This document shows, piece by piece, positions 4,273 to 40,835 of a DNA stretch of 64,000 nucleotides. The notes under the pieces were generated by a model. It did no database searches and was not told where the DNA came from. It was given only the letters and a program-made list of their open reading frames with translations. The translations under genes were made by a program, and so were the position numbers. The stretch lies in the IMG/VR virus record IMGVR_UViG_3300049855_000348, positions 1 to 64,000 of that record; one strand, 5' to 3'. Position 1 is the first letter of the stretch; each line of letters starts with the position of its first letter.

Positions 4273-5031
4273 TCAGATCACTGTGTCGAATCTGGTGACA
4301 TATGCGACCCATCCGGTCGACAGAGCAGTGAGGACCAATGTGAAGTTGGGAGCGTTGTAGACCACAGAAGCAGACACATCAAAAGTGCCACCGGAATCCG
4401 GATGATTGAGGTAATCACTGATCAGGTATGAGAACTGATTGGCCGCACGCATGATGAGGGTCAGTTTGTAGCTTTCCATCACGCCATCTTTTCGCAGGAT
4501 GATGTCGTAGACGGTCTTGTGCAGGGTTCCTTCGGCGATCGAATCGATGTAATTTTCACCAACAGAAAGCGGTACTGGTGCCGGTGTCGCATTTCCGATC
4601 GGCAACACAGACCGCTCTGTCAGTACCTTGATTCCAGTGCCGATGAGCGGGTAGATCATCCCGCCTTCGCCAATCACGTAGAAGTGTAGATCGCTAGATC
4701 CATTGGGGGTGAACGGCAACACCGCCTCATAGACTCGGCCCACCACGAAGCCAGCAGGCATGACCTCTCTACTGCCAGACTTCCTTGGCAGGACGATGCA
4801 CTGACCGATAGCACGGATGGCGACGATCTTCACAGCGTCGTAGCGCAGTGGGTAGATCATCCCAGCTTCGCCGACCACGTAGAAGTGCAGGTCGCTGGAG
4901 CCGTTTGGGGTGAATGATCCGACGATCGGGTAACGGGTACCAATCTTGAAACCAGCCGGCAGCACCGTCCGTGTCCCCGACTTCCGGGGCAGTACCATAC
5001 AGAGCCCGCTGATTGTCGTGTTTACATCCAC
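4273..5031 (-). CDS. Hypothetical protein with an internal duplication of about 67 aa
   Basis: C.VLPRKSG.R.V.PAGF..G..Y....FTPNGSSDLHFYV.GE.GMIYPL occurs twice. TAGATA motif upstream. Confidence 0.7.
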   Translation of the reverse strand: MDVNTTISGLCMVLPRKSGTRTVLPAGFKIGTRYPIVGSFTPNGSSDLHFYVVGEAGMIYPLRYDAVKIVAIRAIGQCIVLPRKSGSREVMPAGFVVGRVYEAVLPFTPNGSSDLHFYVIGEGGMIYPLIGTGIKVLTERSVLPIGNATPAPVPLSVGENYIDSIAEGTLHKTVYDIILRKDGVMESYKLTLIMRAANQFSYLISDYLNHPDSGGTFDVSASVVYNAPNFTLVLTALSTGWVAYVTRFDTVI

Positions 5032-5034
5032 GAT

Positions 5035-5310
5035 CTATCTAGCTTTCAATTTGCCACAGCCGCAGGACTTGGAACGACCAGAATAGAGATTTCCCGACAA
5101 AATCAGCACTTCTTTTCCGCAGTCACACCGGCATGCCCAGGCGCGGGAACGTGGGTGGTGCATCGTCACTGGAGCCAGGGCGACCAGCTTTCCGAAGCGT
5201 TGGCCTGTCACATCTTTGGCTCTCACACAACTATGTATGTTGGTTCCGTAGATAAGAATCCCAAGCCTCCACATCCTCCTGAAGGAAAGTCCCATGACCG
5301 AAACCACCAA
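5035..5310 (-). pseudogene. Fragment like the N-terminus of phage HNH/AP2 homing endonucleases (start uncertain)
   Basis: DVTGQRFGKL...WACRCDCG...L.SG.SKSCGC with no nuclease domain following. Confidence 0.5.
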
Positions 5311-5722
5311 TGCCTACTACACCGACAAGACGCCGCCGCTCATCAAGATGACGGCGTTCACGGATCTGAGCGAGCAGGAAGTCGCCAAGATGCGCTCCTT
5401 CCGCACGGTGTCCGACCCCCTGATCCAGCCCGGTGAAGTGTTCTTCTACATGCCCAACAGTGGCGGTGCGAAGAACATCGAGGGTGATGATCGCTTCTGG
5501 GAGTCGAACAAGCGCATCAGCGCGGCCTTCCTCAACGAAGCGAATCCGATGAACCGTCGTAAGGTCGAAACCCTCCAGTCCAACGGTTCTTCGGTCACCG
5601 AGTTCCGTGAACTCGCTGCCACTGCCGCCCATGCCAACGATCAGCGTTGCATCAAGGTCATGTGGCTCAACCCGGTCACCAGCCCGGACTCCTTTGTCCA
5701 GGTCCGTGTCAACCTGAAGTGA
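5294..5722 (+). CDS. Hypothetical late protein
   Basis: 142 aa, SD GAAGGA, TAGATA at 5249-5254, GC3-biased codons. Confidence 0.75.
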   Translation: MTETTNAYYTDKTPPLIKMTAFTDLSEQEVAKMRSFRTVSDPLIQPGEVFFYMPNSGGAKNIEGDDRFWESNKRISAAFLNEANPMNRRKVETLQSNGSSVTEFRELAATAAHANDQRCIKVMWLNPVTSPDSFVQVRVNLK

Positions 5723-14516: not shown

Positions 14517-15059
14517 ATGAGCCCACAAGAGATCATGCGAGCCTACCCAGTAGGCCGCATCCTTGAACTGTCACCTGAGGCGAAGCATCGCATCAAGTTC
14601 CTGGCAGTGTGCCTTGATAACATCGACCTCTGCCAGCGTAAATTGCAAGACAAGCTCGGTGGAATGCATGCAATCGGCCAGCCCGTCACCGGCGAGCAGA
14701 TCACCGAGGTGATCGACAACATGCTCGATGCCCAACCGTTCGAGGGGATGATCTCGCTCACCCTCGGCGAGGGATGGAATGGTCCGGAAGCGATCATCCA
14801 CGCCAAGAATTCGGCTCGATGCCTGCGCAAGGTCATCTGGTCGGTGATCTACGACGATGTCGTCGCCACCTACAGCATCACGTTCTCGGTCTGGAAGAAA
14901 CTCAAGTGCTCGCTGCTGGAGAATCCACCCGGTGGTGGCGTTCTCATTCGTGGCTACGAGTTCGCCGAGAAGGAACTCGGACACGAGGGTAAGTCGAACC
15001 GCCCTGATGTCTGTCCCGACTTCCCACCGATGGGTCTCATGGATGAGGATGAGGAATGA
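14517..15059 (+). CDS. Hypothetical protein
   Basis: 180 aa, SD GAGGA. Confidence 0.7.
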   Translation: MSPQEIMRAYPVGRILELSPEAKHRIKFLAVCLDNIDLCQRKLQDKLGGMHAIGQPVTGEQITEVIDNMLDAQPFEGMISLTLGEGWNGPEAIIHAKNSARCLRKVIWSVIYDDVVATYSITFSVWKKLKCSLLENPPGGGVLIRGYEFAEKELGHEGKSNRPDVCPDFPPMGLMDEDEE

Positions 15060-16957
15060 GCAACCTCAACCAAATCATGGAAGCGATCATGTGCTCGGAC
15101 ACCGGCGAGGAGGTCGACACCGACCCGATCGTTGGCCAGCTTGCCGGTGGAAACGCCGTCAGTTGGAAACCGTCTGACCAGATGCTTCAGGCTGCTGCCT
15201 CCCTCGGTTACGGCCAAGGCGTCTCACAGTTGAAGCCGATGATGACCCCCAAGGGTCGTCTGATCGGCTTCCCCTTCCCGACCCCACGTCCCTTTCAACT
15301 TGAAGCTGTGGATGCCGTGCTCGAAGAGTTCAAGGCCGGCAACAACGTTCTATTCGAGGCTGGTACCGGGTTCGGTAAGTCACCACTGGAGATCGGTGTC
15401 GTCTCGGCCTTCCAGTCCGCCTACCTGCTCATCGGTCGCAATGATCTGGTCGACCAATGGGAGCGTGACTTCGATCACTTCAGCAAGATCGGCTTCTACA
15501 AAGCTCGTGCTCGCTTCGACTGCACAGAGATCTCCGGCGATCGTGGCCCTCTCAACTGTTCCCAGGCCAAGACCCCCTGCGGCAAGAAGCGCCAGAGCAA
15601 AGACAACGACTGCCAAGCCTGCCCCTACGCCGTGAATCGTGATGTGGCGCTCGCCAAGCCCTACACCGTGATGACGCTGTCCCTGGGGATGACCATCTTC
15701 AAACACCTCCAGATGCACCCTGGCGTGACCAAGCGTGACGTGATGGTGATCGACGAGTGCTCAGAGCTTGAGTCTGAGATCATGAAGTTCTTCGAGTTCC
15801 AGGTGTCGACCAAGACGCTCTTCCGGGCAATTCAGAAGACGATCACCATGGGTCAGTTCTTCAGCGAAGGGGATGATTTCTATAGCCGCTGGCCGAACGT
15901 CACGCCCAGCACCAACTTCGCCATCGCCATCAACCAAATGCGCCCGATTTCAGACACCTCCGCCTGCTTCCGTTGGGCGATCGAGATCTCAGGCATTGCC
16001 CAGCAACGCATGAACTGGCTTGGTGCCGGCCAGAAGTCCGAGGAGGCTGAGAAGATCGCCGAAGCCTGCGAACAGATCATCCGCATGTGCAAGCAGGTGA
16101 TCGACGCCATCGGCGACAACGTGCCCTACTTCGGGGAGATGGTCCCAGATGAGGTTGATGGCACCTACAAGGTCCGCGTCTCCCCCCTGGAGGCTAAGGG
16201 CATGCTGAGGCGTCTCCTGGCCCCGTACGCGAAACATCTCCTGTTCGTGAGTGCTACGACCGGGTCAGCCGAGATGTTCGCTAGAACGCACTCCCTGCCC
16301 AAGGAAGCGCCTGTCGTCAAGGTGACCGCCCCGTCCGGCTTCCCGGTGGCCAATCGTATGGTCTACAACCTGCGTGCCGGCAACATGAGTAACAAGACCC
16401 AGGTGGCCGACTCCCCCTTGGTCCTGAAGATGCTGGTCGACCTCGCCACCCAACGCCAGTCAGAGCAGCCCCGGTTCGATCACATCAACCAGAAGGGCAT
16501 CATCCACACCTACAACAACAAGATCACGGACATGGTCCTGGAAGCCTTCCGGTCGGCTGGCCTTGGTCACCGGGTGATCCCTCTCAAGGGGTCTGGCAAG
16601 GCTCGTGAGCAGGCCATGGAGATCTTCACCAAGACCACCCAGCCGCTGATCCTGGTCAGTCCCTCGGCGATGCTCGGCCTGTCTCTGAATGACGATCTGG
16701 CCCGCTGGCAGGCCATCGTGAAGGTACCGTACCCGTACCTCGGGGATCAGAGCATTGCCCATCGCAAGGAGACAATCGCAGGCTGGTACGAGTGGCAGAC
16801 CGCCAAGGATCTGATCCAGACCTTCGGTCGCATCGTGCGCTCAGACAGCGACTGGGGATCCACCTACATCCTCGACGACGCCTTCACCGGGTTCTACTCC
16901 CGCAACAGTGATCTCTTTCCTGCGTTCATCCGCGAAGCCATCTGGCAGAAGCCGTGA
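15056..16957 (+). CDS. dinG: DinG/XPD-family SF2 helicase
   Basis: AGTGFGKS Walker A, IDEC, SAT, IVKVPYP, LIQTFGRIVRS.SDWG..YILD; Cys cluster. Confidence 0.9.
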   Translation: MSNLNQIMEAIMCSDTGEEVDTDPIVGQLAGGNAVSWKPSDQMLQAAASLGYGQGVSQLKPMMTPKGRLIGFPFPTPRPFQLEAVDAVLEEFKAGNNVLFEAGTGFGKSPLEIGVVSAFQSAYLLIGRNDLVDQWERDFDHFSKIGFYKARARFDCTEISGDRGPLNCSQAKTPCGKKRQSKDNDCQACPYAVNRDVALAKPYTVMTLSLGMTIFKHLQMHPGVTKRDVMVIDECSELESEIMKFFEFQVSTKTLFRAIQKTITMGQFFSEGDDFYSRWPNVTPSTNFAIAINQMRPISDTSACFRWAIEISGIAQQRMNWLGAGQKSEEAEKIAEACEQIIRMCKQVIDAIGDNVPYFGEMVPDEVDGTYKVRVSPLEAKGMLRRLLAPYAKHLLFVSATTGSAEMFARTHSLPKEAPVVKVTAPSGFPVANRMVYNLRAGNMSNKTQVADSPLVLKMLVDLATQRQSEQPRFDHINQKGIIHTYNNKITDMVLEAFRSAGLGHRVIPLKGSGKAREQAMEIFTKTTQPLILVSPSAMLGLSLNDDLARWQAIVKVPYPYLGDQSIAHRKETIAGWYEWQTAKDLIQTFGRIVRSDSDWGSTYILDDAFTGFYSRNSDLFPAFIREAIWQKP

Positions 16958-18307: not shown

Positions 18308-18345
18308 GAACCCCGGGACCAAAAAGTCTCGGGGTTCTTCTTTTT
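18308..18345 (+). terminator. Attenuator terminator before the + tRNA array
   Basis: GAACCCCGGGAC-CAAAAA-GTCTCGGGGTTC-TTCTTTTT. Confidence 0.9.
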
Positions 18346-18490
18346 CTGATCCTCACGGATCTTGACAACTTTATAATCGTGGAAGCCAATGAGGGGAGAA
18401 ATCCCTTCATTCTTGGACCTACCATCCTGTTCTACTAGACAGGGAAGCCTGTGGGGAGAAATCCTCTAGCCGTGGTGGTGGTCCTGGTAT

Positions 18491-18565
18491 CGTCGAGTAT
18501 TTCAGCGGAAGAATATCTGCATGACATGCAGAAGGTCGGTGGTTCGATCCCACCCTCGACGACCA
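18491..18565 (+). tRNA. tRNA-Val(GAC)
   Basis: Cloverleaf, loop ATGACAT, encoded CCA. Confidence 0.9.
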
Positions 18566-18570
18566 AACAA

Positions 18571-18648
18571 TGCGGAGTAACTGGAGATGGAACCAGCCCA
18601 GCCTCATAAGCTGAACAAACGTGTGTTCGAGTCACACCTCCGCAACCA
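18571..18648 (+). tRNA. tRNA-Met(CAT); Met versus Ile2 not resolvable
   Basis: Cloverleaf, loop CTCATAA, CCA. Confidence 0.88.
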
Positions 18649-18649
18649 T

Positions 18650-18839
18650 TTGCAAGGACCTCTCTGCCCACCATCTCGATCCTAAGAAGAAAGAAGACAA
18701 CATCGGTACGATGGTCAGAAGAAGAGTGGCTATCAAAACTTTGGAAATCGAACTGCAAAAGTGTCTCTGCGTGTGTGAGAACTGTCATCGCAAGATCCAT
18801 GCAGGTATCATCAAACCTTTTCTCAGTGCTGGATCATGA
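18650..18839 (+). pseudogene. Truncated HNH endonuclease remnant
   Basis: HHLDP.KK...KC.CVCENCHRKIH begins right after the tRNA CCA with no start context. Confidence 0.65.
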
Positions 18840-18886
18840 CCGAACGCCTGTGGTCATTCCCTGGCGGGCACTCGGATTCTTCACAT

Positions 18887-18963
18887 GGTGGTCGTAGCTC
18901 AATGGATAGAGCACTGGACTGTGGCTCCAGCGGCTGTGGGTTCGACTCCCATCGATCACACCA
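18887..18963 (+). tRNA. tRNA-His(GTG)
   Basis: Cloverleaf, loop CTGTGGC, G-1 present, A73. Confidence 0.92.
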
Positions 18964-18970
18964 GTTCATT

Positions 18971-19047
18971 GTGCGGAGTACGCGCCTGACCCAGGCAAGA
19001 GGGTTTGCTCTAACCTCCCAGAGAAGAACGGGAGGTTGCTTCGGCAT
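18971..19047 (+). ncRNA. Putative structured spacer RNA (three hairpins in a closing stem)
   Basis: GCCTG/CAGGC, AGAG/CTCT, AACCTCCC/GGGAGGTT. Confidence 0.4.
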
Positions 19048-19121
19048 GGCTTGGTCGCTCAACGGCAGGGCGCTGGTTTGAAAAACCAGAGACGAAGGTT
19101 CGACTCCTTCTCAAGCCACCA
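19048..19121 (+). tRNA. tRNA-Phe(GAA)
   Basis: Cloverleaf, loop TTGAAAA. Confidence 0.92.
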
Positions 19122-19133
19122 TCTCCTTCTCAC

Positions 19134-19211
19134 GGTCGGTTCACTGCATGGTGCAGTGTGCGCAAGGACAGTCCCCTAAGCACGGCGGTTCGATTCCCCG
19201 GCTGACCACCA
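19134..19211 (+). ncRNA. tRNA-like RNA with no canonical anticodon loop
   Basis: GGTCGGT/GCTGACC-A-CCA, TTCGATT loop, GC-GCAA-GG..CC-CCTAA-GC in place of the anticodon arm. Confidence 0.7.
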
Positions 19212-19221
19212 TTTTTTTCAT

Positions 19222-19294
19222 CGGCTGGAATAGGTGCGCGTAAGGCATCAGATCCCCTCAAGCGATGGAGGTTCGATTCCTCCCTGGCCGACCA
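19222..19294 (+). ncRNA. tRNA-like RNA lacking a D-arm
   Basis: CGGCTGG/CTGGCCG-A-CCA, perfect GGAGG-TTCGATT-CCTCC, module GC-GTAA-GG..CC-CCTCAA-GC. Confidence 0.7.
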
Positions 19295-19296
19295 AG

Positions 19297-19402
19297 TACG
19301 ACTTCTCGGGTTCCGCAAGGAACGATCGTCCTACTGGCTACAACGGTGAAAATCCGGTGGATGCCAGAGGTGGTGGGATGGCTCACCAAATAAACTGAGA
19401 CT
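19297..19402 (+). ncRNA. Structured RNA A (paralog of RNA B)
   Basis: ACGAC start, CTCGG/CTGAG closing stem, GCAA tetraloop, AATAAA before the closing strand. Confidence 0.55.
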
Positions 19403-19407
19403 CATAA

Positions 19408-19484
19408 GCACCGATCGGCTGGTGGAAAAGCTACCTCCCTTTCAAGGAGATTCTTCGCGGGTTCGACTCCCGTTCGGTGTACCA
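19408..19484 (+). tRNA. tRNA-Glu(TTC)
   Basis: Cloverleaf, loop CTTTCAA. Confidence 0.88.
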
Positions 19485-19590
19485 ACGACGGAGCACAGTG
19501 ATCGAAAGATCGACCGGCTAGGCAACTCGCAAGAGTGCTCGAAAGGGCGGAGTCTAGTGGGGTGTAAGCACCTCGAATAAACTGTGAGTT
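19485..19590 (+). ncRNA. Structured RNA B (paralog of RNA A)
   Basis: ACGAC start, CACAG/CTGTG closing stem, GAAA and GCAA tetraloops, AATAAA. Confidence 0.55.
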
Positions 19591-19592
19591 AT

Positions 19593-19666
19593 GGTCCTTT
19601 CTGTCAGTGGCAGGCAGCCTGATTCTCAGTCAGACAACGTCGGTTCGATTCCGACAAGGACTACCA
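19593..19666 (+). tRNA. tRNA-Glu(CTC)
   Basis: Cloverleaf, loop TTCTCAG. Confidence 0.88.
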
Positions 19667-19669
19667 GCA

Positions 19670-19767
19670 AGAGCGGGACACTGGTTCGAGGCCAGTCATC
19701 GCAAGATGTAGCTCAGGGTGAAAACGTAAGGCATCAAACCCCCAAGTAATCCGGAAGAGCACGCTCT
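19670..19767 (+). ncRNA. Permuted (T-AS-D order) tRNA mimic with inserted module
   Basis: AGAGCG/CGCTCT closing; CTGG-TTCGAGG-CCAG; CATC-GCAA-GATG; TA-GCTC...GAGC. Confidence 0.55.
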
Positions 19768-19771
19768 ATTT

Positions 19772-19849
19772 GTTCCTGAGGACTAACGGCTAGGTCACCT
19801 CCCTGTCACGGAGTCATTCAAGTGGGTTCAACTCCCATCAGGAACGCCA
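19772..19849 (+). tRNA. tRNA-Asp(GTC)
   Basis: Cloverleaf, loop CTGTCAC, G73. Confidence 0.9.
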
Positions 19850-19853
19850 ACAT

Positions 19854-19927
19854 CCACGCTTCGTCTAATGGCAGGGCACCGATCTGATACGTCGGATACC
19901 AAGGTTCGATTCCTTGAGCGTGGACCA
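19854..19927 (+). tRNA. tRNA-Ile(GAT)
   Basis: Cloverleaf, loop CTGATAC. Confidence 0.88.
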
Positions 19928-19941
19928 CTTCAGTTTCACAT

Positions 19942-20016
19942 TGTGGGATGGCCTATGTGGTAGGGCACCCGGTTGTTACCCGGACTATACTGGTTCGACT
20001 CCAGTTCCCACAGCCA
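19942..20016 (+). tRNA. tRNA-Asn(GTT)
   Basis: Cloverleaf, loop TTGTTAC. Confidence 0.92.
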
Positions 20017-20021
20017 CTTTT

Positions 20022-20097
20022 GGGGTCGTAGCTCAATTGGCAGAGCACCTGTTTTGCACGCAGGATGTTAGCGGTTCAAGTCCGCTCGATTCCACCA
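20022..20097 (+). tRNA. tRNA-Ala(TGC)
   Basis: Cloverleaf, G3:U70. Confidence 0.95.
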
Positions 20098-20167
20098 CGC
20101 GGGAGTAATCTGAGAAATCAGAGAGAATTACCAGCCTCACAGCCGGCAAGGAGTAGACTGTGGTTTT

Positions 20168-20243
20168 GGGGAGTTAGCTCATCTGGTAGAGCGCGAGCAT
20201 GGCATGTTCGAGGCGAGGAGTTCAAGTCTCCTACTCTCCACCA
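20168..20243 (+). tRNA. tRNA-Ala(GGC)
   Basis: Cloverleaf, G3:U70. Confidence 0.92.
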
Positions 20244-20256
20244 CTTTCAATCATAC

Positions 20257-20340
20257 GGGCGGCGATATCTCAGAAGCGTAAGGATGATCCCCCAAGTTAT
20301 GAGAAAATCCTATGGGGTGAAAGCCCTCAACTGTCCACCA
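20257..20340 (+). ncRNA. tRNA-like RNA with an Ala-type acceptor (G3:U70, A73, CCA) and a TGAAAGC T-loop
   Basis: GGGCGG/CTGTCC-A-CCA; TGGGG-TGAAAGC-CCTCA; module GC-GTAA-GG..CC-CCCAA-GT. Confidence 0.6.
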
Positions 20341-20342
20341 CT

Positions 20343-20432
20343 CGATCGGAACGTCAGTCGCAGCGTAAGGCTTTTATCAAATCCCCAAGCTGTGCAGTAA
20401 CGCAACTGCTGGTGAAAGACCAGCCTGATCAC
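20343..20432 (+). ncRNA. tRNA-like RNA with a TGAAAGA T-loop and no encoded CCA
   Basis: GATCGG/CTGATC; GCTGG-TGAAAGA-CCAGC; module GCAGC-GTAA-GG..CC-CCAA-GCTGT. Confidence 0.55.
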
Positions 20433-20440
20433 TCTTCAAA

Positions 20441-20523
20441 CGAAACCCTGGCGGTGAAAAACCGCTTCCTCGGCGCATCCCCTACGTTGGTCTACCTCTG
20501 AAGTTTATCGACCCAGGGCTTCG
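20441..20523 (+). ncRNA. Structured RNA with a T-loop-like first hairpin
   Basis: CGAAACCCTGG/CCAGGGCTTCG closing; GCGG-TGAAAAA-CCGC. Confidence 0.45.
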
Positions 20524-20602
20524 TGTTTCTGCTAGCTAGATTCATGGGTACCATCAGCGACATCGACGATCAACTCTACGTTCAGCACATCAAGTAACGC
20601 AT

Positions 20603-20677
20603 ACGTCGATAGCTCCAATGTAGAGCGACGGTTTCCAAAACCGTTGGTTGGGGGTTCAAGTCCCTCTCGACGTGCCA
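20603..20677 (+). tRNA. tRNA-Trp(CCA)
   Basis: Cloverleaf, loop TTCCAAA. Confidence 0.92.
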
Positions 20678-20682
20678 TTCAC

Positions 20683-20757
20683 TGAGAGATAGTTCAACGG
20701 TAGAACGCTGCCCTCTGGAGGCAGATGCTAGAGGTTCGAGTCCTCTTCTCTCAACCA
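20683..20757 (+). tRNA. tRNA-Gln(CTG)
   Basis: Cloverleaf. Confidence 0.95.
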
Positions 20758-20760
20758 CAC

Positions 20761-20835
20761 TCAGGAATAGTTCAACGGTAGAACGCTGACCTTTGGAGTC
20801 AGTTGCTCCAGGTTCGAGTCCTGGTTCCTGAACCA
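20761..20835 (+). tRNA. tRNA-Gln(TTG)
   Basis: Cloverleaf. Confidence 0.95.
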
Positions 20836-20843
20836 TTTCACAT

Positions 20844-20922
20844 CTGCGTGTAGCTCAGCCTGGAACAGAGCACTTGCCTTGGGAGCAAGGGGTCGGAGGT
20901 TCAAATCCTCTCACGTAGACCA
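20844..20922 (+). tRNA. tRNA-Pro(TGG)
   Basis: Cloverleaf, loop CTTGGGA. Confidence 0.92.
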
Positions 20923-20927
20923 TTCAT

Positions 20928-21009
20928 GACGGTCGAGTCGAAAGTCGGGCGCTCCGGCATCAGATTGCAACCCTGATGACAGGTGGTTGAACTCCACCGA
21001 TCGTCTCCA
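20928..21009 (+). tRNA. tRNA-Cys(GCA) with an enlarged D-arm
   Basis: Loop TTGCAAC, U73, D region about 8 nt longer than normal. Confidence 0.8.
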
Positions 21010-21014
21010 TTCAC

Positions 21015-21090
21015 GTGTGTGTATCTCAGTGGCTAGAGAGCTTCCTTGCCAAGGAAGAGGTCGCAGGTTCAAGTCCTGTCACACACTCCA
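21015..21090 (+). tRNA. tRNA-Gly(GCC)
   Basis: Cloverleaf, U73. Confidence 0.95.
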
Positions 21091-21093
21091 ACA

Positions 21094-21160
21094 GGGGCAA
21101 ATGCGGGTTCAACTCCCGCTGCGACTTCGGTCGTATCGTCTAACCCGGTAGGACGGCCCC
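21094..21160 (+). ncRNA. Circularly permuted tRNA fold (YrlA/Y-RNA-like T-AS-D order); structure may extend to about 21280
   Basis: GGGGC-AAAT-GCGGG-TTCAACT-CCCGC-TGCGAC-TTCG-GTCGTA-TC-GTCT-AACCCGGT-AGGAC-G-GCCCC. Confidence 0.75.
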
Positions 21161-21282
21161 ACCCCGTGCGGATTGGATACCCGCACGGAATCCGAAGTCC
21201 TCAGGTTCAAGCCAAGGCAACCGCTCGCCGAGCGGAATACAAAATGCGGCTAGAGCAGGGGAGCACGAACGTGGCCCCGTTT

Positions 21283-21356
21283 GCCGATGTAGGTCAATGG
21301 TAGATCTGCTGCCTTCCAAGCAGAGGACGCGGGTTCGATTCCCGCCATCGGCTCCA
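21283..21356 (+). tRNA. tRNA-Gly(TCC)
   Basis: Cloverleaf, U73. Confidence 0.92.
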
Positions 21357-21360
21357 TCAT

Positions 21361-21436
21361 GTGTGCCTAGCTCAATGGATAGAGCATCTGACTACGGATC
21401 AGAAGGTTGAAGGTTCGAGTCCTTCGGTACACGCCA
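21361..21436 (+). tRNA. tRNA-Arg(ACG)
   Basis: Cloverleaf. Confidence 0.95.
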
Positions 21437-21469
21437 TTGCATAGCGATCTTTTTGGCTAGCATGTAACC

Positions 21470-21997
21470 ATGTCACTCAAAGATGCCCTCTTTCACTTTC
21501 GTGATCTTGGTTACTACGTTGATGATCAAGGAAATGTATTCAACCCAAGAGGAAAGATTCTTCGGTGTTCAACAAACAAAGATGGTTACAAAAGAATTAC
21601 CACAAGAATGAGAAATCATCCAGTTCATGGGGATTGGTGCCCTAAGGTTGAGGTTCACCGTCTTGCCGGTTATCAGAAGTTCGGAGACAAAATCTTCACC
21701 GAAGGACTTGAGATCTGTCACGATGATGGCGATAAGCGAAACAACGCCAAAGACAATCTGCGACTCGATACGCACAAAAGTAATATGATGGATGTTCCTC
21801 AAGAGGTAAGGATCAATAGAGCAAGACGTGCTGGTAGAGAACATGCCAAGCTAACAGATGAGCAGGTTGCTCACATTCGTTCATCTGGCATGACTCTGAA
21901 ACAGATCATGCAAACATACGGTATCAGTAAGTCTGGTGCCTCCTACGTCAGATCAGGAAAGACTTACGCCAGCCCGTGTATCCCCTCGCTTTCCTAA
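21470..21997 (+). mobile_element. HNH homing endonuclease inserted in the tRNA array
   Basis: VHRL...ICHDDGDKRNN..DNL, C-terminal HTH-like segment; AT-richer than its flanks. Confidence 0.85.
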
Positions 21998-22051
21998 AGC
22001 GGTGAAAGGGTAACTGGACACATGCAGGTTCAAATCCTGCCTCGGGTACCA
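21972..22051 (+). tRNA. Non-canonical rewired tRNA-Arg(CCT)-like, 80 nt
   Basis: Acceptor stem, T-arm and CCA; anticodon arm TCGCT-TTCCTAA-AGCGG nested inside CCC/GGG; AACTGG lies 3' of it. Confidence 0.7.
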
Positions 22052-22054
22052 CAT

Positions 22055-22132
22055 CGGGGTCCTAGTACGGGAGTGTCTGCATACCATTCGGTCACTACAG
22101 CCTCGGCGGTTCAATCCCGCCAACCTCGACCA
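22055..22132 (+). ncRNA. tRNA-like RNA lacking a D-arm (G3:U70, A73, CCA)
   Basis: CGGGGT/ACCTCG; GGCGG-TTCAATC-CCGCC; single long bulged arm ending in loop TCTGCATAC. Confidence 0.6.
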
Positions 22133-22135
22133 CAT

Positions 22136-22211
22136 GCGATCGTATTTCAATTGGAAGAACACCACCCTCCGAAGGTGGAAGGTGCAGGTTCGAGTCCTGC
22201 CGATCGCGCCA
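22136..22211 (+). tRNA. tRNA-Arg(CCG)
   Basis: Cloverleaf. Confidence 0.92.
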
Positions 22212-22214
22212 TCT

Positions 22215-22290
22215 GGTGACGTAGCTCAATGGACAGAGCTTCCAGCTTCTACCTGGATGGTTGGAGGTTCGAGTCCTCCCGTCATCGCCA
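22215..22290 (+). tRNA. tRNA-Arg(TCT)
   Basis: Cloverleaf. Confidence 0.95.
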
Positions 22291-22294
22291 TCAT

Positions 22295-22369
22295 GCTGCC
22301 ATAGCCGAGTGGTAAGGCACTTCATTCGTAACGAAGAGACCGGGTGTTCGATTCACCCTGGCAGCACCA
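22295..22369 (+). tRNA. tRNA-Thr(CGT)
   Basis: Cloverleaf. Confidence 0.9.
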
Positions 22370-22373
22370 TCAC

Positions 22374-22449
22374 GCCCCCATAGCTCAGTTGGTAGAGCAA
22401 CAGTTTTGTAAACTGTAGGTCGTCGGTTCGATCCCGACTGGTGGCTCCA
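22374..22449 (+). tRNA. tRNA-Thr(TGT)
   Basis: Cloverleaf. Confidence 0.93.
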
Positions 22450-22456
22450 TTTTCAC

Positions 22457-22530
22457 GCTGCTATAGTTCAGTGGTAAAACACGTCCTTGGTAAGGACGAG
22501 CCCCAGGTTCAATTCCTGGTAGCAGCACCA
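22457..22530 (+). tRNA. tRNA-Thr(GGT)
   Basis: Cloverleaf. Confidence 0.93.
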
Positions 22531-22535
22531 TTCAT

Positions 22536-22611
22536 CCATCAGTAGCGTAATTGGCAGCGCAGCGGGTTTTTACCCCGTGGGTTGTGAGTTCGACTCTCAC
22601 CTGATGGACCA
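22536..22611 (+). tRNA. tRNA-Lys(TTT)
   Basis: Cloverleaf. Confidence 0.92.
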
Positions 22612-22617
22612 TCGCAT

Positions 22618-22693
22618 GCATCCATAGCTCAACTGGCAGAGCACTCGGTTCTTACCCAAGGGGTTGGAGGTTCAAATCCTCCTGGATGCACCA
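22618..22693 (+). tRNA. tRNA-Lys(CTT)
   Basis: Cloverleaf. Confidence 0.92.
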
Positions 22694-22707
22694 TCATTAC
22701 ATAAGTC

Positions 22708-22941
22708 ATGCCAGCATGGAAATGGATGATCCTGAAGTTCTGTACCAGAGCGCATTTCATGCGGCTCATAGCAACCTTGATCATCCTCATCGCAGGCTTT
22801 CAATCTCTCTACTACCAGAAGATTGAAGACACGTGGTTGATCCTGGTTGGTGCAGTGATGAACCACTACTTCAACCACAAAGAAGCTGCGAACGTCACGG
22901 AAGAAGACAAGAATCCGGACGACGAATGCAAGGTCGGTTAG
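22708..22941 (+). CDS. Small two-TM membrane protein embedded in the tRNA array
   Basis: Two hydrophobic segments and an acidic tail; the stop codon lies inside tRNA-Val. Confidence 0.55.
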   Translation: MPAWKWMILKFCTRAHFMRLIATLIILIAGFQSLYYQKIEDTWLILVGAVMNHYFNHKEAANVTEEDKNPDDECKVG

Positions 22942-23006
22942 TTCAGCGGTAGAACGCTTCTCTTACACGGAAGATGTCGGGGGTTCGATCCCCTCACCGA
23001 CTACCA
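22932..23006 (+). tRNA. tRNA-Val(TAC)
   Basis: Cloverleaf. Confidence 0.93.
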
Positions 23007-23011
23007 CTTGC

Positions 23012-23091
23012 CGGTCTGTATCGGCTCGGTCTTATAAGCCGTCGAAACCGTAATTGGTTACATGAGGGTTCGACTCCCTCCAGACCGACCA
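23012..23091 (+). tRNA. Non-canonical rewired tRNA-Ile(TAT)-like, 80 nt
   Basis: Same segment lengths as 21972-22051; loop CTTATAA; CGG/CCG covaries with CCC/GGG. Confidence 0.75.
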
Positions 23092-23896: not shown

Positions 23897-24578
23897 TCAC
23901 TCCATCAAGCCGTCCAGGTCCCCCTTCATCCAAGCACGCACCGTGATGGATCGCCCTGTGCGGTGGTCCCTCACGTTGTCGTTCTGCACCTGGATGGTGC
24001 GGATCTTGTCACCACGCTCGCCGGAGCCTATCTGCTGCCGGCGATCGTCGTTTTGATCGGTATGGTGTTGGGTAGCGATGCCCCCCGCCAGACGCTCCTG
24101 TAACAGGGCCATGGCAGCATGCTTGTTCGACAACTGGTGGCGCTCTTTGTCGGCACGGACAGTCATGCCCGTCGGACGATGGGTGATCTGCACACCCGAC
24201 TCAGTCTTGTTGCGGTGCTGACCACCTGGGCCAGATCCACGGACGGTGATGATATCCAGGTCGCGTTCATCCAGCACGAACTTCTGCTGCTGGCTTCCAT
24301 CGATCACCGCCACGGTGACCGTCGAGCTATGGACACGACCCTTGCGCTCAGTGGGTGGAACCCGCTGCCAACGATGGCCGCCTGCTTCTTGGCTGAAGGC
24401 TTCTTTGGCTCCCTTACCAGTAACGGTGAGCCGCAGAAAGCCGTGAGACTCTTGATCCACTACAACTTCAAAGACCCCTCCGCGCTCCCCATTTGCGATA
24501 GATGGTGAGGTGTTCGCGCACGAGCAATCGTGCGTCCTCGCCGCCTTCAGCGGCTCTGATTTCGAGGTGGATAGTCAT
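23897..24578 (-). CDS. Class I peptide chain release factor lacking domain 1 (about 226 aa), needing a +1 programmed frameshift at 24468-24473
   Basis: Frame 0: MTIHLEIRAAEGGEDA...RRGL-TGA. +1 frame: EVVVDQ...EAGGHRWQRVPPTERKGRVHSSTVTVAV...GSGPGGQHRNKTESGV..KIRT. Confidence 0.88.
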
Positions 24579-39878: not shown

Positions 39879-39967
39879 TGGCGGAAGTGGCACGAATCGA
39901 ACGTGCAAGACCCGTGAAGGTCTGTTGAGGTTCAAGCTCAGTCCCCTCGCCTATAGGGAGCACTTCC
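39879..39967 (-). tRNA. tRNA-Ser(TGA)
   Basis: Long variable arm, G73, CCA. Confidence 0.9.
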
Positions 39968-39972
39968 ATGAA

Positions 39973-40064
39973 TGGCGGATACGGCAGGATTTGAACCTGC
40001 GGGTGACTTGCGCCACCTCCTAGTTTCGAGCTAGGTGCGATAAGCCGGGCTCTGCCACGTATCC
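39973..40064 (-). tRNA. tRNA-Ser(CGA)
   Basis: Long variable arm, G73. Confidence 0.92.
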
Positions 40065-40069
40065 ATGAA

Positions 40070-40162
40070 TGGCGGATTGCTAGGGAGTCGGACCCTCAAC
40101 GTGTTTCCACGTTTCATCGCTTTCCAGGCGAGTACGGTTAGCCACCACCGTCAACACAATCC
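40070..40162 (-). tRNA. tRNA-Ser(GGA)
   Basis: Long variable arm, G73. Confidence 0.88.
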
Positions 40163-40167
40163 ATGAA

Positions 40168-40259
40168 TGGCGGAACGGGTGAGATTTGAACTCACGGGTG
40201 ACTTTCGCCACCTCTTCCTTAGCAAGGAAGTGCAATAGGCCAGACTCTGCCACCGTTCC
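40168..40259 (-). tRNA. tRNA-Ser(GCT)
   Basis: Long variable arm, G73. Confidence 0.93.
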
Positions 40260-40263
40260 ATGA

Positions 40264-40347
40264 TGGTCTCTGAGGTGGGACTCGAACCCACAAAGCTGCG
40301 ATGTTTAGGACCGCAAGGTGTGCCATTCCCTATGAAGCCACTCAGAG
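40264..40347 (-). tRNA. Atypical tRNA-Leu(TAA)-like
   Basis: GCGGT-CCTAAAC-ATCGC (C33), expanded D region, short variable loop. Confidence 0.65.
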
Positions 40348-40351
40348 AAGT

Positions 40352-40429
40352 TGGTGTCCCATGCAGGAGTCGAACCTGCAAAGATCTGCATTTTGAATGC
40401 AGCGCGTCTGCCAATTGCGCCAATGGGAC
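40352..40429 (-). tRNA. tRNA-Leu(CAA), short variable loop
   Basis: Cloverleaf, A73. Confidence 0.9.
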
Positions 40430-40430
40430 G

Positions 40431-40507
40431 TGGTATCCACGAAGAGATTTGAACTCTTACTGTTCGGTGCCTAAGACCGATGCCTCTGCCGGTTGGGCTA
40501 CGTGGAC
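40431..40507 (-). tRNA. tRNA-Leu(TAG), short variable loop
   Basis: Cloverleaf, A73. Confidence 0.9.
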
Positions 40508-40513
40508 GTGAAA

Positions 40514-40599
40514 TGGTGGGATAGGCTGGAGTCGAACCAACAGTGGCGGTGAAGCGTCACGTTTACAGCGTGGTGAGCCTTCCAATGCTCAACTATCCC
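40514..40599 (-). tRNA. tRNA-Tyr(GTA)
   Basis: Long variable arm, loop CTGTAAA. Confidence 0.9.
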
Positions 40600-40609
40600 A
40601 GATGAAAAA

Positions 40610-40688
40610 TGGTACCCGTGACAGGAGTCGAACCTGCAATTTTACTACCACCTCAAGGTAGCGCGTCTGCCAATTTCGCCACACGGGC
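40610..40688 (-). tRNA. tRNA-Leu(GAG), short variable loop
   Basis: Cloverleaf, A73. Confidence 0.9.
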
Positions 40689-40691
40689 ATG

Positions 40692-40769
40692 TGGTACCGG
40701 GGGCGGGAGTCGAACCCGCAAAGAACATGGACCTGAACCATGCGCGTCTGCCTGTTTCGCCACCCCGGC
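40692..40769 (-). tRNA. tRNA-Leu(CAG), short variable loop
   Basis: Cloverleaf, A73. Confidence 0.9.
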
Positions 40770-40800
40770 GTGTATGAAGCGACCACGATCAGAAAGTTGT

Positions 40801-40835
40801 AAAAGAAAGAACCCCGGCTTTTTGGGCCGGGGTTC
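40801..40835 (-). terminator. Attenuator terminator before the Ser/Leu/Tyr tRNA array
   Basis: GAACCCCGGC-CCAAAAA-GCCGGGGTTC-TTTCTTTT. Confidence 0.9.

What the first reader, a model, noticed from the sequence alone, without database searches (positions are those of the whole stretch)
21091..21280. Circularly permuted tRNA (YrlA / Y-RNA-like) directly after tRNA-Gly
The 3' half of a Glu/Asp-like tRNA (stem GGGGC, T-arm, acceptor 3' strand) precedes the 5' half (GGTCGTA, D-arm, GCCCC), and the acceptor stem is closed by a TTCG tetraloop. Established: T-AS-D order with a closed acceptor is the hallmark of bacterial and phage YrlA RNAs that partner Ro60/Rsr. No Ro60 gene lies in this window and no long Ro-binding stem is evident. 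About 120 nt of further hairpins follow. 19670-19767 shows the same order.
Basis: partly seen in the sequence, partly recalled or inferred. Interest (0 to 1): 0.66.

Follow-up and report, generated by a model that had tools for sequence, protein, structure and literature searches.

The report
Sealed, permuted tRNA mimic in phage
A 220-kb sediment phage carries, inside its tRNA gene array, a conserved and highly expressed small RNA whose first 70 bases are a tRNA with its halves swapped and its amino-acid end sealed shut; it looks like the tRNA-like part of bacterial Y RNAs, but the phage has neither the Ro60 protein nor the Ro60-binding part.

Summary
Window 21094-21160 reads stem strand, T-arm, acceptor stem closed by cUUCGg, D-arm, complementary stem strand. 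ARAGORN calls the un-permuted version a tRNA. A 122-nt hairpin domain follows, up to tRNA-Gly(TCC). A relative with 59% helicase identity has the same element at the same place between the two tRNA-Gly genes. All 20 pairs are kept and 10 changed on both sides. Its acceptor is 7 bp and its loop still reads A-CCA-U. Two more relatives appear in soil and rhizosphere contigs, and one lacks the 3' domain. A sediment metatranscriptome holds a contig identical to 21102-21275 at word depth 385, while the phage flanks have depth 0. So it is a discrete, abundant RNA that is not cut at the sealed acceptor. The complete genome has no TROVE/Ro60, RtcB, RNA ligase or CCA-adding enzyme, and the RNA has no room for a 5' Ro-binding strand. 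The Rfam YrlA model matches only its tRNA-like core (27 bits); the genuine YrlA of mycobacteriophage Bxz1 scores much the same (32.5 bits). The second site, 19670-19767, is also real, with 7 compensatory pairs. Verdict: a new Ro60-less variant of the YrlA-type tRNA mimic, probably a decoy or scaffold for a tRNA-elbow-binding factor. Its function is inferred, not shown.

The parts
21015..21090 (+). tRNA-Gly(GCC) with encoded CCA. Its 3' processing sets the 5' boundary of the element.
   Evidence: ARAGORN; Rfam tRNA 67.3 bits.
21094..21098 (+). S1 5' strand (GGGGC), the counterpart of the 3' strand of a tRNA anticodon stem. It pairs with 21156-21160.
   Evidence: Sequence. L003 has GAGGG/CUCUC here: 2 compensatory pairs and 1 wobble. 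The X4 relative has CCUUC: 2 wobbles and 1 broken pair.
21099..21102 (+). Variable-loop counterpart (AAAU). U21102 is the U48 partner of A15 (A21143), the Levitt pair.
   Evidence: Sequence. L003 has AACU, so A15/U48 is kept.
21103..21119 (+). T-arm: a 5-bp stem with a UUCAACU loop.
   Evidence: Orphan T-arm scan; YrlA and tmRNA T-arm alignments; 2 compensatory pairs against L003; C21104>U gives a wobble in X2, and A21111>G is the usual R57 change in X4.
21120..21135 (+). Sealed acceptor stem: UGCGAC / GUCGUA (6 bp) closed by the UUCG tetraloop at 21126-21129. There is no CCA and no free end.
   Evidence: Sequence. 5 of 6 pairs are compensatory against L003, whose stem is 7 bp with an A-CCA-U loop. 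U21134>C turns G.U into G-C in X4. The RNA contig runs through the loop uncut.
21136..21155 (+). U8-N9, the D-arm (GUCU / AACCCGGUA / GGAC, with A14, A15, G18, G19 and A21) and G26.
   Evidence: Sequence; YrlA model alignment; 1 compensatory pair and 1 wobble against L003; the X4 changes fall in the variable D-loop positions, and the GG is kept.
21156..21160 (+). S1 3' strand (GCCCC). This is the end of the tRNA-like module.
   Evidence: In the X2 relative the module ends here, followed by 8 nt and then tRNA-Gly(TCC).
21161..21282 (+). 3' accessory domain, containing:
- hairpin H2, 21164-21171/21181-21188;
- conserved block AAGUCCU, 21195-21201;
- hairpin H3, 21221-21226/21230-21235;
- A/U-rich linker, 21236-21245;
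- conserved GGCUAG, 21248-21253;
- possible terminal hairpin, 21258-21278.
   Evidence: Alignment with L003. H2 has 4 compensatory pairs, read from the sequences. H3 has 1 compensatory pair and 1 wobble, and the same wobble occurs in X4. The domain is absent in X2. It matches no Rfam family.
21102..21275 (+). Stretch covered by an abundant RNA contig in a sediment metatranscriptome.
   Evidence: run X7, a 196-nt contig at word depth 385 with 0 differences, joined to an Illumina adapter after 21275. Depth is 0 at 20693-20847, 20941-21002 and 21437-21500.
21283..21356 (+). tRNA-Gly(UCC). RNase P cleavage at its 5' end would set the 3' boundary of the element.
   Evidence: ARAGORN. That RNase P makes tRNA 5' ends is established knowledge.
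19670..19767 (+). Second, paralogous permuted tRNA-like RNA, made of:
- closing stem 19670-19675/19762-19767;
- T-arm 19680-19696;
- 4-bp acceptor closed by GCAA, 19697-19708;
- D-stem 19711-19714/19757-19760, with a 42-nt insertion carrying a GUAAGG...CCCCCAAG motif.
   Evidence: Against L004:5726-5833, 19 pairs are all kept and 7 are compensatory on a sequence-only alignment.

Best explanation
The element is a real non-coding RNA gene of a clade of T4-like jumbo phages from sediment and soil.

How it is made:
- It is co-transcribed with the tRNA array. A terminator lies before the array, and no promoter or terminator lies at the element.
- It is set free as an RNA of about 175-190 nt by the enzymes that trim the neighbouring tRNA-Gly genes.

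What it consists of:
- The first 70 nt fold as a tRNA whose termini lie where the anticodon loop would be and whose acceptor end is closed by a tetraloop.
- All nucleotides that build the tRNA elbow are kept: U8, A14, A15-U48, G18 G19, the T-loop UUCRA and G26. There is no anticodon, no CCA end and no free acceptor.
- The last 122 nt are an accessory hairpin domain that some relatives lack.

Most likely mechanism (inferred): the RNA accumulates to a high level as an inert tRNA look-alike. It cannot be charged, cannot enter translation and cannot be trimmed from the acceptor end. It binds a protein or RNA that recognises the tRNA elbow and acceptor/T-arm helix, acting either as a decoy/sponge or as a tether for whatever the 3' domain binds. 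This is the logic of the tRNA-like module of YrlA, but it is used here without Ro60.

Confidence in each step: real conserved structured RNA gene, about 0.9; released by tRNA processing, about 0.7; elbow-mimic decoy or scaffold, about 0.35.
For: Anatomy:
-. ARAGORN accepts the un-permuted window and L003 modules as tRNAs.
- the MFE of each isolated module is the permuted cloverleaf.

Conservation:
- The homolog lies at the syntenic place between tRNA-Gly(GCC) and tRNA-Gly(UCC) in L003, whose helicase is 59% identical.
- All 20 pairs are paired in both copies, 10 are compensatory and 2 are wobble changes. Slid controls give 46-63% paired and at most 3 compensatory.
- The model scores 90 bits on the two true copies and at most 34.5 bits on tRNA junctions over 980 kb.
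- Substitutions in the two further relatives, X4 and X2, are mostly loop changes or wobble-preserving.

The module is autonomous:
- X2 keeps the module but lacks the 3' domain.
- A second sealed permuted module (19670-19767) is conserved with 7 compensatory pairs.

Expression:
- A metatranscriptome contig identical to 21102-21275 has word depth 385. The phage flanks have depth 0, an adapter is joined at 21275, and the contig is continuous across the sealed acceptor loop.

Context:
- A terminator lies before the array, and none lies near the element.
- The phage has no Ro60, RtcB, Rnl-type ligase or CCA-adding enzyme.
Against: - No binding partner is known, the host is unknown, and no experiment bears on function.
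- Covariation rests on two full sequences plus two partly reconstructed ones, and the alignment was fitted to the structure.
- The RNA evidence is one assembled contig from one run. Contigs cannot give true ends or strand. The contig starts at 21102, after the S1 5' strand, so S1 may be absent from the mature RNA.
- In X4 the element carries 15 substitutions while the neighbouring tRNA-Gly(GCC) has none, so constraint is weaker than on true tRNAs.
- A decoy without an anticodon loop would not attract the best-known tRNA-targeting defences, the anticodon nucleases.
Confidence: 0.5

Rival explanations
1. It is a bona fide YrlA-type Y RNA that works with a Ro60/Rsr protein supplied by the host. 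It would tether Rsr to an exonuclease or gate it, as in Deinococcus and Salmonella.
For: - It has the same V-T-AS-D order with a closed acceptor.
- Its YrlA model score (27.3 bits) is close to that of the genuine Bxz1 YrlA (32.5 bits).
- The window and X4 copies contain UCCGAAG at 21191-21197, which resembles GNCGAAN0-1G.
Against: - The complete phage genome has no TROVE gene. YrlA genes lie within 4 kb of rsr on the same strand, and the phages that carry YrlA encode Ro60 themselves (PMC4201824).
- The Rsr-contact motif should lie near the 5' end. Here only 2-3 nt precede the module.
- The UCCGAAG look-alike lies 3' of the module and is absent in L003. The whole 3' domain is absent in X2.
- There is no terminal 5'/3' stem such as the 10-bp stem of Bxz1 YrlA.
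Confidence: 0.1
2. The functional part is the 3' domain, acting as a regulatory or protein-binding small RNA. The permuted tRNA is only a built-in scaffold that gives the transcript precise processing and resistance to nucleases, like engineered tRNA scaffolds.
For: - Module and 3' domain lie on one abundant RNA.
- The 3' domain has conserved blocks and two hairpins with compensatory changes.
- It has an A/U-rich single-stranded linker typical of small-RNA seed or Hfq sites.
Against: - X2 keeps the module without any cargo.
- The second module (19670-19767) has no 3' domain.
- The linker is the least conserved part.
- The elbow tertiary nucleotides are kept, which simple stability would not require.
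Confidence: 0.2
3. It is an evolutionary relic: the junction of two tandem tRNA genes left after deletions. It still folds and is still transcribed because it sits in the array, but it has no function.
For: - The L003 loop still reads discriminator-CCA plus one spacer base, as at a tRNA-tRNA junction.
- The tandem tRNA-Glu genes of L122 give the best false hit of the model, 34.5 bits, which shows how such a module can arise.
- The element evolves faster than neighbouring tRNAs in X4.
Against: - All four helices are maintained by 10 compensatory changes across a divergence at which the helicase is only 59% identical.
- The loop was remodelled into a cUUCGg tetraloop in three lineages.
- No parent tRNA is left in the array.
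- Two independent paralogous modules are kept, and the RNA is highly abundant.
Confidence: 0.12
4. It is a permuted or split tRNA (or two-piece tmRNA-like) gene whose halves are cut at the acceptor loop and joined or used together, giving a chargeable molecule.
For: - The 3' half precedes the 5' half.
- L003 has a 7-bp acceptor and an encoded ACCA in the loop, like M. smegmatis YrlA, which RNase P cuts and which then bears CCA (PMC4201824).
Against: - In the window, X2 and X4 copies the stem is 6 bp and is closed by UUCG without CCA. The RNA contig is continuous across the loop.
- No anticodon loop can be formed, because the leader is 2-3 nt and there is no U33 or R37.
- There is no G3:U70, no conserved tag frame, and ARAGORN finds no permuted tmRNA here.
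- The phage has a normal tmRNA elsewhere and no RtcB or Rnl ligase.
Confidence: 0.05

Closest known systems
YrlA (Rfam RF02553), the bacterial and mycobacteriophage Y RNA; Chen et al. 2014, PMC4201824
   Same: - It has a tRNA-like domain in the order variable region, T-arm, closed acceptor stem, D-arm, opened where the anticodon loop would be.
- The elbow nucleotides, including an A15:U48 or G15:C48 pair, are kept.
- The acceptor is 6 bp and closed (as in Salmonella) or 7 bp and RNase P-cleavable with CCA (as in M. smegmatis; compare L003).
- The model score is similar to that of the Bxz1 phage YrlA.
   Different: - There is no Ro60 gene in the phage.
- There is no 5' GNCGAAN0-1G strand and no terminal stem.
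- The module sits at the extreme 5' end of the RNA, directly behind a tRNA, inside a tRNA array.
- A different, unrelated 3' domain takes the place of the Ro-binding module.
Phage T4 stable RNAs rnaC and rnaD (species 1 and 2)
   Same: They are small stable RNAs of unknown function encoded in a phage tRNA cluster next to a homing endonuclease gene and processed with the tRNAs. The capsid of this phage is gp23-like.
   Different: T4 rnaC has a normal-order acceptor stem plus T-arm at its 3' end and an open end. It is not permuted or sealed, shares no sequence similarity with the element, and gets no YrlA hit.
Circularly permuted tRNA genes of the red alga Cyanidioschyzon merolae (own knowledge: Soma et al. 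2007)
   Same: The gene order is 3' half then 5' half, with the acceptor strands facing each other across a short intervening loop.
   Different: Those pre-tRNAs are circularised at a bulge-helix-bulge junction and opened at the acceptor to give working tRNAs. Here there is no joinable anticodon loop and no ligase, and the acceptor stays closed in the RNA seen.
Two-piece (permuted) tmRNA
   Same: The T-arm and 3' acceptor strand are encoded ahead of the 5' acceptor strand, followed by a long structured 3' part.
   Different: It has a full D-arm, no G3:U70, no conserved tag reading frame and no pseudoknots detected. The phage has its own one-piece tmRNA.

Membership tests
YrlA / bacterial Y RNA (RF02553) | tRNA-like domain with T-arm, closed acceptor stem and D-arm in that order | tested here: met
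   cmscan aligns 21102-21154 to model positions 30-81 at 27.3 bits. L003:15394-15448 scores 26.1 bits. The genuine Bxz1 YrlA gives 32.5 bits over positions 23-87. tRNA-tRNA junctions reach similar Rfam scores, so my own model was needed to separate them.
YrlA / bacterial Y RNA (RF02553) | Score at or above the Rfam gathering threshold (69 bits) over the full model | tested here: not met
   The score is 27.3 bits, and model positions 1-29 and 82-114 are unmatched. Note that the Bxz1 YrlA fails this threshold as well.
YrlA / bacterial Y RNA (RF02553) | GNCGAAN0-1G motif near the 5' end (Rsr contact), and/or a helix formed by the 5' and 3' ends | tested here: not met
   Only ACA (window) or CC (L003) lies between the upstream tRNA's CCA and the module. 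A UCCGAAG look-alike lies 3' of the module, at 21191-21197. It is not conserved in L003, and the whole region is absent in X2. For contrast, see the Bxz1 YrlA terminal stem.
YrlA / bacterial Y RNA (RF02553) | Encoded within about 4 kb of a Ro60/TROVE gene on the same strand | tested here: not met
   PF05731 finds nothing in the complete 220,489-bp genome, while the controls ring. Whether the host has Rsr cannot be tested, because the host is unknown.
YrlA / bacterial Y RNA (RF02553) | Bound by Rsr in vivo; carries tRNA modifications (pseudouridine 55, dihydrouridine) | not testable with these tools
   This needs immunoprecipitation and modification mapping.
Functional circularly permuted tRNA gene | Halves can be joined to give a 7-nt anticodon loop with U33 and R37, and the acceptor loop is excised to give a CCA end | tested here: not met
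   There is no such loop. The window copy has a UUCG loop and no CCA. The RNA contig is uncut at the loop. The phage has no RtcB or Rnl ligase (the PF09511 search had no working control).
Two-piece tmRNA | G3:U70 in the acceptor, a tag reading frame with a conserved stop, and detection by ARAGORN | tested here: not met
   Pair 3 is C-G in both copies. The frames downstream differ between the window and L003 (read). ARAGORN reports only the one-piece tmRNA at 85462-85837.
Tandem-tRNA junction (false positive) | The T-arm belongs to a complete upstream tRNA and the D-arm to a complete downstream tRNA | tested here: not met
   No tRNA is called by ARAGORN or Rfam in 21091-21282. The module gives 90 bits with my model, against at most 34.5 bits for real junctions.

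The most novel reading that the evidence does not exclude
Sealed, permuted tRNA mimics are a class of phage RNAs that work on their own, without Ro60. They would be highly expressed decoys or adaptors that capture a host factor reading the tRNA elbow, such as a tRNA-directed defence enzyme, RNase P or a translation factor. If so, the tRNA-like module of Y RNAs would be an independent functional unit that phages deploy from their tRNA arrays, and the cleavable L003 form and the sealed window form would be two states of it.
Probability: 0.25. Interest if true: 0.8.

Novelty: new variant of a known kind. Interest (0 to 1): 0.6.

Why it matters
What the tRNA-like module of bacterial Y RNAs binds has remained open since 2014, because it has always been studied together with Ro60. 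Here the same module occurs alone, twice, in a phage lineage without Ro60. Its structure is under selection and it is abundant in an environmental transcriptome. That gives a system in which the module's partner could be sought without Ro60.

It also bears on an older puzzle: the non-tRNA stable RNAs in phage tRNA clusters, such as T4 rnaC and rnaD. And it shows that the 'gaps' in large phage tRNA arrays can be RNA genes that tRNA finders and Rfam thresholds miss.

Tried and rejected
- Near and protein searches of GenBank phages found no close relative; the best helicase identity was 28%.
- IMG/VR held no copy by exact or blocked patterns. It held only relatives with 23-26% helicase identity, and their records lack the module.
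- The three-block pattern gave 46 hits in JGI metagenomes and 35 in GTDB genomes. All were chance matches in unrelated, mostly coding, DNA. GTDB holds no helicase relative.
- Contigs of other helicase or RF-1-domain relatives stop short of the Gly gap or lack the array: L004, L005-L008, L122, L123 and L125.
- RNase P idea: AAGUCC ... ACAAAAUGCGGCU resembles the two P4 strands of RNase P RNA. I rejected it because there is no Rfam RNase P hit even at E 10, the 'ACA' is not kept in X4 or L003, and the candidate pairing shows no covariation.
- A GGUU/AACC hairpin and the MFE pairing of GGCUAG with AGCC are contradicted by the X4 changes at 21206 and 21207 and by L003.
- The whole-element MFE pairs the acceptor loop region with CCGAAGUC at 21192-21199. 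L003 cannot form this pairing, so I rejected it.
- A 5'/3' terminal stem (GGGGC with GCCCC at 21274-21278) is rejected in favour of S1, because X2 has S1 without any 3' domain and S1 covaries.
- No parent tRNA for the module exists in the array.
- RNAalifold on the 3' domain was unreliable, because MAFFT misaligned two sequences that differ by indels.
- L003's record is not held, so Ro60 and RtcB could not be sought in that relative.
- Literature searches found no description of such RNAs in phages without Ro60.

Full report
**Setting.** The window is the first 64 kb of a 220,489-bp IMG/VR phage record with direct terminal repeats. It is rated 100% complete and has 56% G+C. Its capsid is gp23-like, and portal and large terminase genes are recognisable. 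It carries two tRNA arrays, 18491-23006 on the + strand and 39879-40769 on the - strand, and its own tmRNA at 85462-85837. No close relative exists among GenBank phages. The element lies between tRNA-Gly(GCC), 21015-21090, and tRNA-Gly(UCC), 21283-21356.

**Observation.**
- After a 3-nt leader come GGGGC (21094-98) and AAAU.
- Next is a canonical T-arm (21103-19), then UGCGAC-UUCG-GUCGUA (21120-35), UC, and a canonical D-arm with A14, A15, G18, G19 and A21 (21138-54).
- Then come G and GCCCC (21156-60), which pairs with the first stem strand.
- The nucleotides that build the tRNA elbow are all present: U8, A14, A15 with U48, G18 G19, U54 U55 C56 R57 A58, and G26.
- The isolated module folds by MFE into this four-helix shape (54% of the ensemble, z -2.9).
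- If the two halves are put back in tRNA order around any 7-nt loop, ARAGORN calls a tRNA. The same holds for the homolog in L003.
- No tRNA of the array is a recent parent.
- A further 122 nt of hairpins follow, up to the next tRNA.

**Is it a tRNA-junction artefact?** Chen et al. warned that tandem tRNAs mimic YrlA (PMC4201824). Indeed the Rfam YrlA model gives 19-27 bits at several junctions of this array. The element itself gets 27.3 bits over model positions 30-81. I therefore built a model that includes the closing stem.
- From the window copy alone, the model finds L003:15384-15456 at 39.2 bits (E 7e-8). Junctions reach at most 20 bits.
- Rebuilt from both copies, the model scores 90 bits on the two true copies and at most 34.5 bits on junctions. 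This search covered 980 kb of the window, its relatives and 67 distant IMG/VR loci. A search of 30 whole records gave the same result.
- No tRNA is called inside 21091-21282.

**Conservation.**
- A word search with the neighbouring helicase (15056-16957) found relatives. One is a 191-kb JGI contig (L003, 59% identical helicase) with a syntenic tRNA array and the homologous element at the same place between the two tRNA-Gly genes.
- Between the two copies all 20 pairs are paired, 10 changed on both sides and 2 on one side. Slid controls give 46-63% paired and at most 3 double changes. That alignment was fitted to the structure.
- In L003 the acceptor stem is 7 bp and its loop reads A-CCA-U. That is a discriminator, a CCA and one spacer base, as at a tRNA-tRNA junction.
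- Laying public runs on the region showed two more relatives.
  - A rhizosphere contig (X4) is about 92% identical over the element. In the module it has the usual R57 change, a G.U to G-C change in the acceptor, three changes at variable D-loop positions, and GCCCC changed to CCUUC (two wobbles and one broken pair). In the 3' domain it has a loop change and a U-A to U.G change in hairpin H3.
  - A soil contig (X2) keeps the module, with one C-G to U.G change. It then runs after 8 nt straight into tRNA-Gly(UCC), so it lacks the whole 3' domain.
- The module is therefore the unit common to all four copies.
- X4 has no substitution in the adjacent tRNA-Gly(GCC) but 15 in the element, so the element is less constrained in sequence than true tRNAs.

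**Expression.** In a sediment metatranscriptome (X7, a different study from the source sample), one 196-nt contig at word depth 385 lies on 21102-21275 without any difference. It continues after 21275 into an Illumina adapter.
- The phage sequence at 20693-20847, 20941-21002 and 21437-21500 has depth 0. The contigs on the flanking tRNAs are 80-90% matches from other organisms. So this is RNA, not carried-over phage DNA.
- The RNA is discrete, it joins module and 3' domain in one molecule, and it is not cut at the sealed acceptor loop.
- That only the read-2 type adapter follows the + strand suggests a stranded library and a + strand RNA. This is my inference, not a result of the tool.
- The contig starts at 21102, 8 nt after the start of S1. 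This may be the usual loss of 5' ends in such libraries or a real end, and contigs cannot decide.
- A strong terminator precedes the array, and no promoter-like or terminator-like site lies at the element. This fits co-transcription with the array and release by tRNA end-processing.

**The 3' domain (21161-21282).** Two hairpins are supported.
- H2 (21164-71/21181-88) has four compensatory pairs against L003.
- H3 (21221-26/21230-35) has one compensatory pair plus a wobble, and the same wobble occurs in X4.
- The blocks ACCCCG, AAGUCCU, GGCAACC and GGCUAG are identical in the window, L003 and X4.
- A terminal hairpin (GGGG/CCCC in the window, GGCC/GGCC in L003) is possible.
- The domain matches no Rfam family. 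Other candidate pairings failed (see Tried and rejected).

**Is it a YrlA?** What defines YrlA, beyond the tRNA-like domain, is a GNCGAAN0-1G strand near the 5' end that contacts Rsr, and a location within 4 kb of rsr on the same strand. The phages that carry YrlA encode Ro60 themselves (PMC4201824).
- As a benchmark I looked at mycobacteriophage Bxz1. Its YrlA lies 190 nt upstream of the Ro60 gene gp220 and has a 10-bp terminal stem with the motif beside it. It scores only 32.5 bits on Rfam model positions 23-87. So the Rfam score of the present element is what a true phage YrlA core gives, and the gathering threshold cannot decide membership.
- The other features can decide it, and they are not met. 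The complete genome has no TROVE domain. There is no room for a 5' strand, because only 2-3 nt follow the upstream CCA. There is no terminal stem.
- The only motif look-alike (UCCGAAG, 21191-97) lies 3' of the module, is absent in L003, and is deleted with the whole domain in X2.
- The phage also lacks RtcB, an Rnl2-type ligase and a CCA-adding enzyme.
- I therefore file it as working like the tRNA-like module of YrlA, but not as a member of the Ro60-partnered family. A host-encoded Rsr cannot be excluded, because the host is unknown.

**Mechanism.**
- *Shown:* the anatomy, the conservation of the four helices, the autonomy of the module, and abundant uncut RNA.
- *Inferred:* release by the enzymes that trim the neighbouring tRNAs; an L-shaped fold; inertness in translation and charging, because the acceptor is sealed and the anticodon loop is missing; and action by binding something that reads the tRNA elbow and acceptor/T helix.
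- I favour an autonomous decoy or adaptor role over a mere stabilising scaffold for the 3' domain. X2 keeps the module without cargo, and a second sealed module exists without such a domain.
- The L003 form (7 bp with ACCA in the loop) may be cut by RNase P, as M. smegmatis YrlA is. The window form (6 bp with UUCG) is not cut in the RNA seen.

**Second site.** 19670-19767 has the same order: a closing stem, a T-arm, a 4-bp acceptor closed by GCAA, and a D-stem enclosing a 42-nt insertion. Its homolog is L004:5726-5833. On a sequence-only alignment all 19 pairs hold, and 7 changed on both sides.

**Novelty.** The kind is known: a closed, permuted tRNA mimic of YrlA type. The context is new: there is no Ro60, no Ro-binding module, it is embedded in a phage tRNA array, it occurs in two paralogous forms, and it has a new 3' domain. 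Searches of the open literature found no description of this. The T4 stable RNAs rnaC and rnaD are the nearest precedent for non-tRNA RNAs in a phage tRNA cluster, but they are not permuted.

**Limits.** There are only two complete copies and two partial ones. The RNA evidence comes from one RNA run, kept as contigs. There is no host and no experiment.

Noticed in passing
window about 19134-19200 and about 19222-19300; L003 13131-13215 and 14515-14600; L004 about 4897-5072; L122 about 5257-5410: A second class of tRNA-like RNAs. They have a normal-order acceptor stem, a T-arm and an encoded CCA, but the anticodon arm is replaced by a stem enclosing the motif C-GYAAGG-N4-12-CCCC(C/U)AAG-G. They are conserved in four related phages and missed by ARAGORN. 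T4 rnaC has a similar acceptor plus T-arm layout.
   Followed up: partly
genome + strand 17882, 19162, 19240, 19726, 20278, 20365; - strand 86160 and 86043 (just upstream of the tmRNA): The GYAAGG...CCCC(C/U)AAG motif recurs with complementary flanks. It resembles the 11-nt GAAA-tetraloop receptor (UAUGG/CCUAAG; own knowledge). Many GUGAAA or GAAA hairpin loops lie nearby, for example at 19715, 20316, 20408 and 20451. The 359-nt stretch 20244-20602 may be a larger structured RNA. This is unexplained.
   Followed up: partly
window 22056-22135 and L003:15903-15984: An RNA of about 80 nt with a T-arm and a CCA end that neither ARAGORN nor Rfam calls as a tRNA. It is about 90% identical between the two phages, which makes it more conserved than their canonical tRNAs.
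   Followed up: no
window 20923-21014, 21972-22048, 23010-23089, 40260-40351 (-), 40065-40167 (-): Further non-canonical tRNA-like genes fill the 'gaps' of the arrays. They include a Cys(GCA)-like gene where L003 has a normal tRNA-Cys, a Ser(GGA)-like gene, and two with a UCCUAAA loop. Almost no spacer in the arrays is free of RNA-like structure.
   Followed up: partly
window about 18365-18385 (+) and about 40790-40810 (-): A shared motif, ACAACUUU-N-U-N-AUCGUGG (written here as RNA), lies upstream of both tRNA arrays. It is a candidate phage-specific promoter. A strong terminator at 18308-18337 precedes the + array.
   Followed up: no
window 23897-24460 (-): A 187-aa protein with PCRF and RF-1 domains (release-factor-like) lies beside the tRNA array. 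Thousands of short relatives exist in metagenomes, and mycobacteriophage Bxz1 also has an RF-1 domain protein (gp200).
   Followed up: partly
window 21470-21997 (+): An HNH homing-endonuclease ORF sits inside the tRNA array. L003 has HNH ORFs at other places in its array, and T4 has segB in its tRNA cluster.
   Followed up: no
L126:29979-30055 (mycobacteriophage Bxz1): The genuine YrlA next to Ro60 (gp220) scores 32.5 bits against RF02553, whose gathering threshold is 69 bits. Rfam annotation at the curated threshold therefore misses real phage YrlA RNAs.
   Followed up: yes
genome 85462-85837 (-): The phage encodes a one-piece tmRNA with the tag DDHVEYGRIALAA.
   Followed up: no
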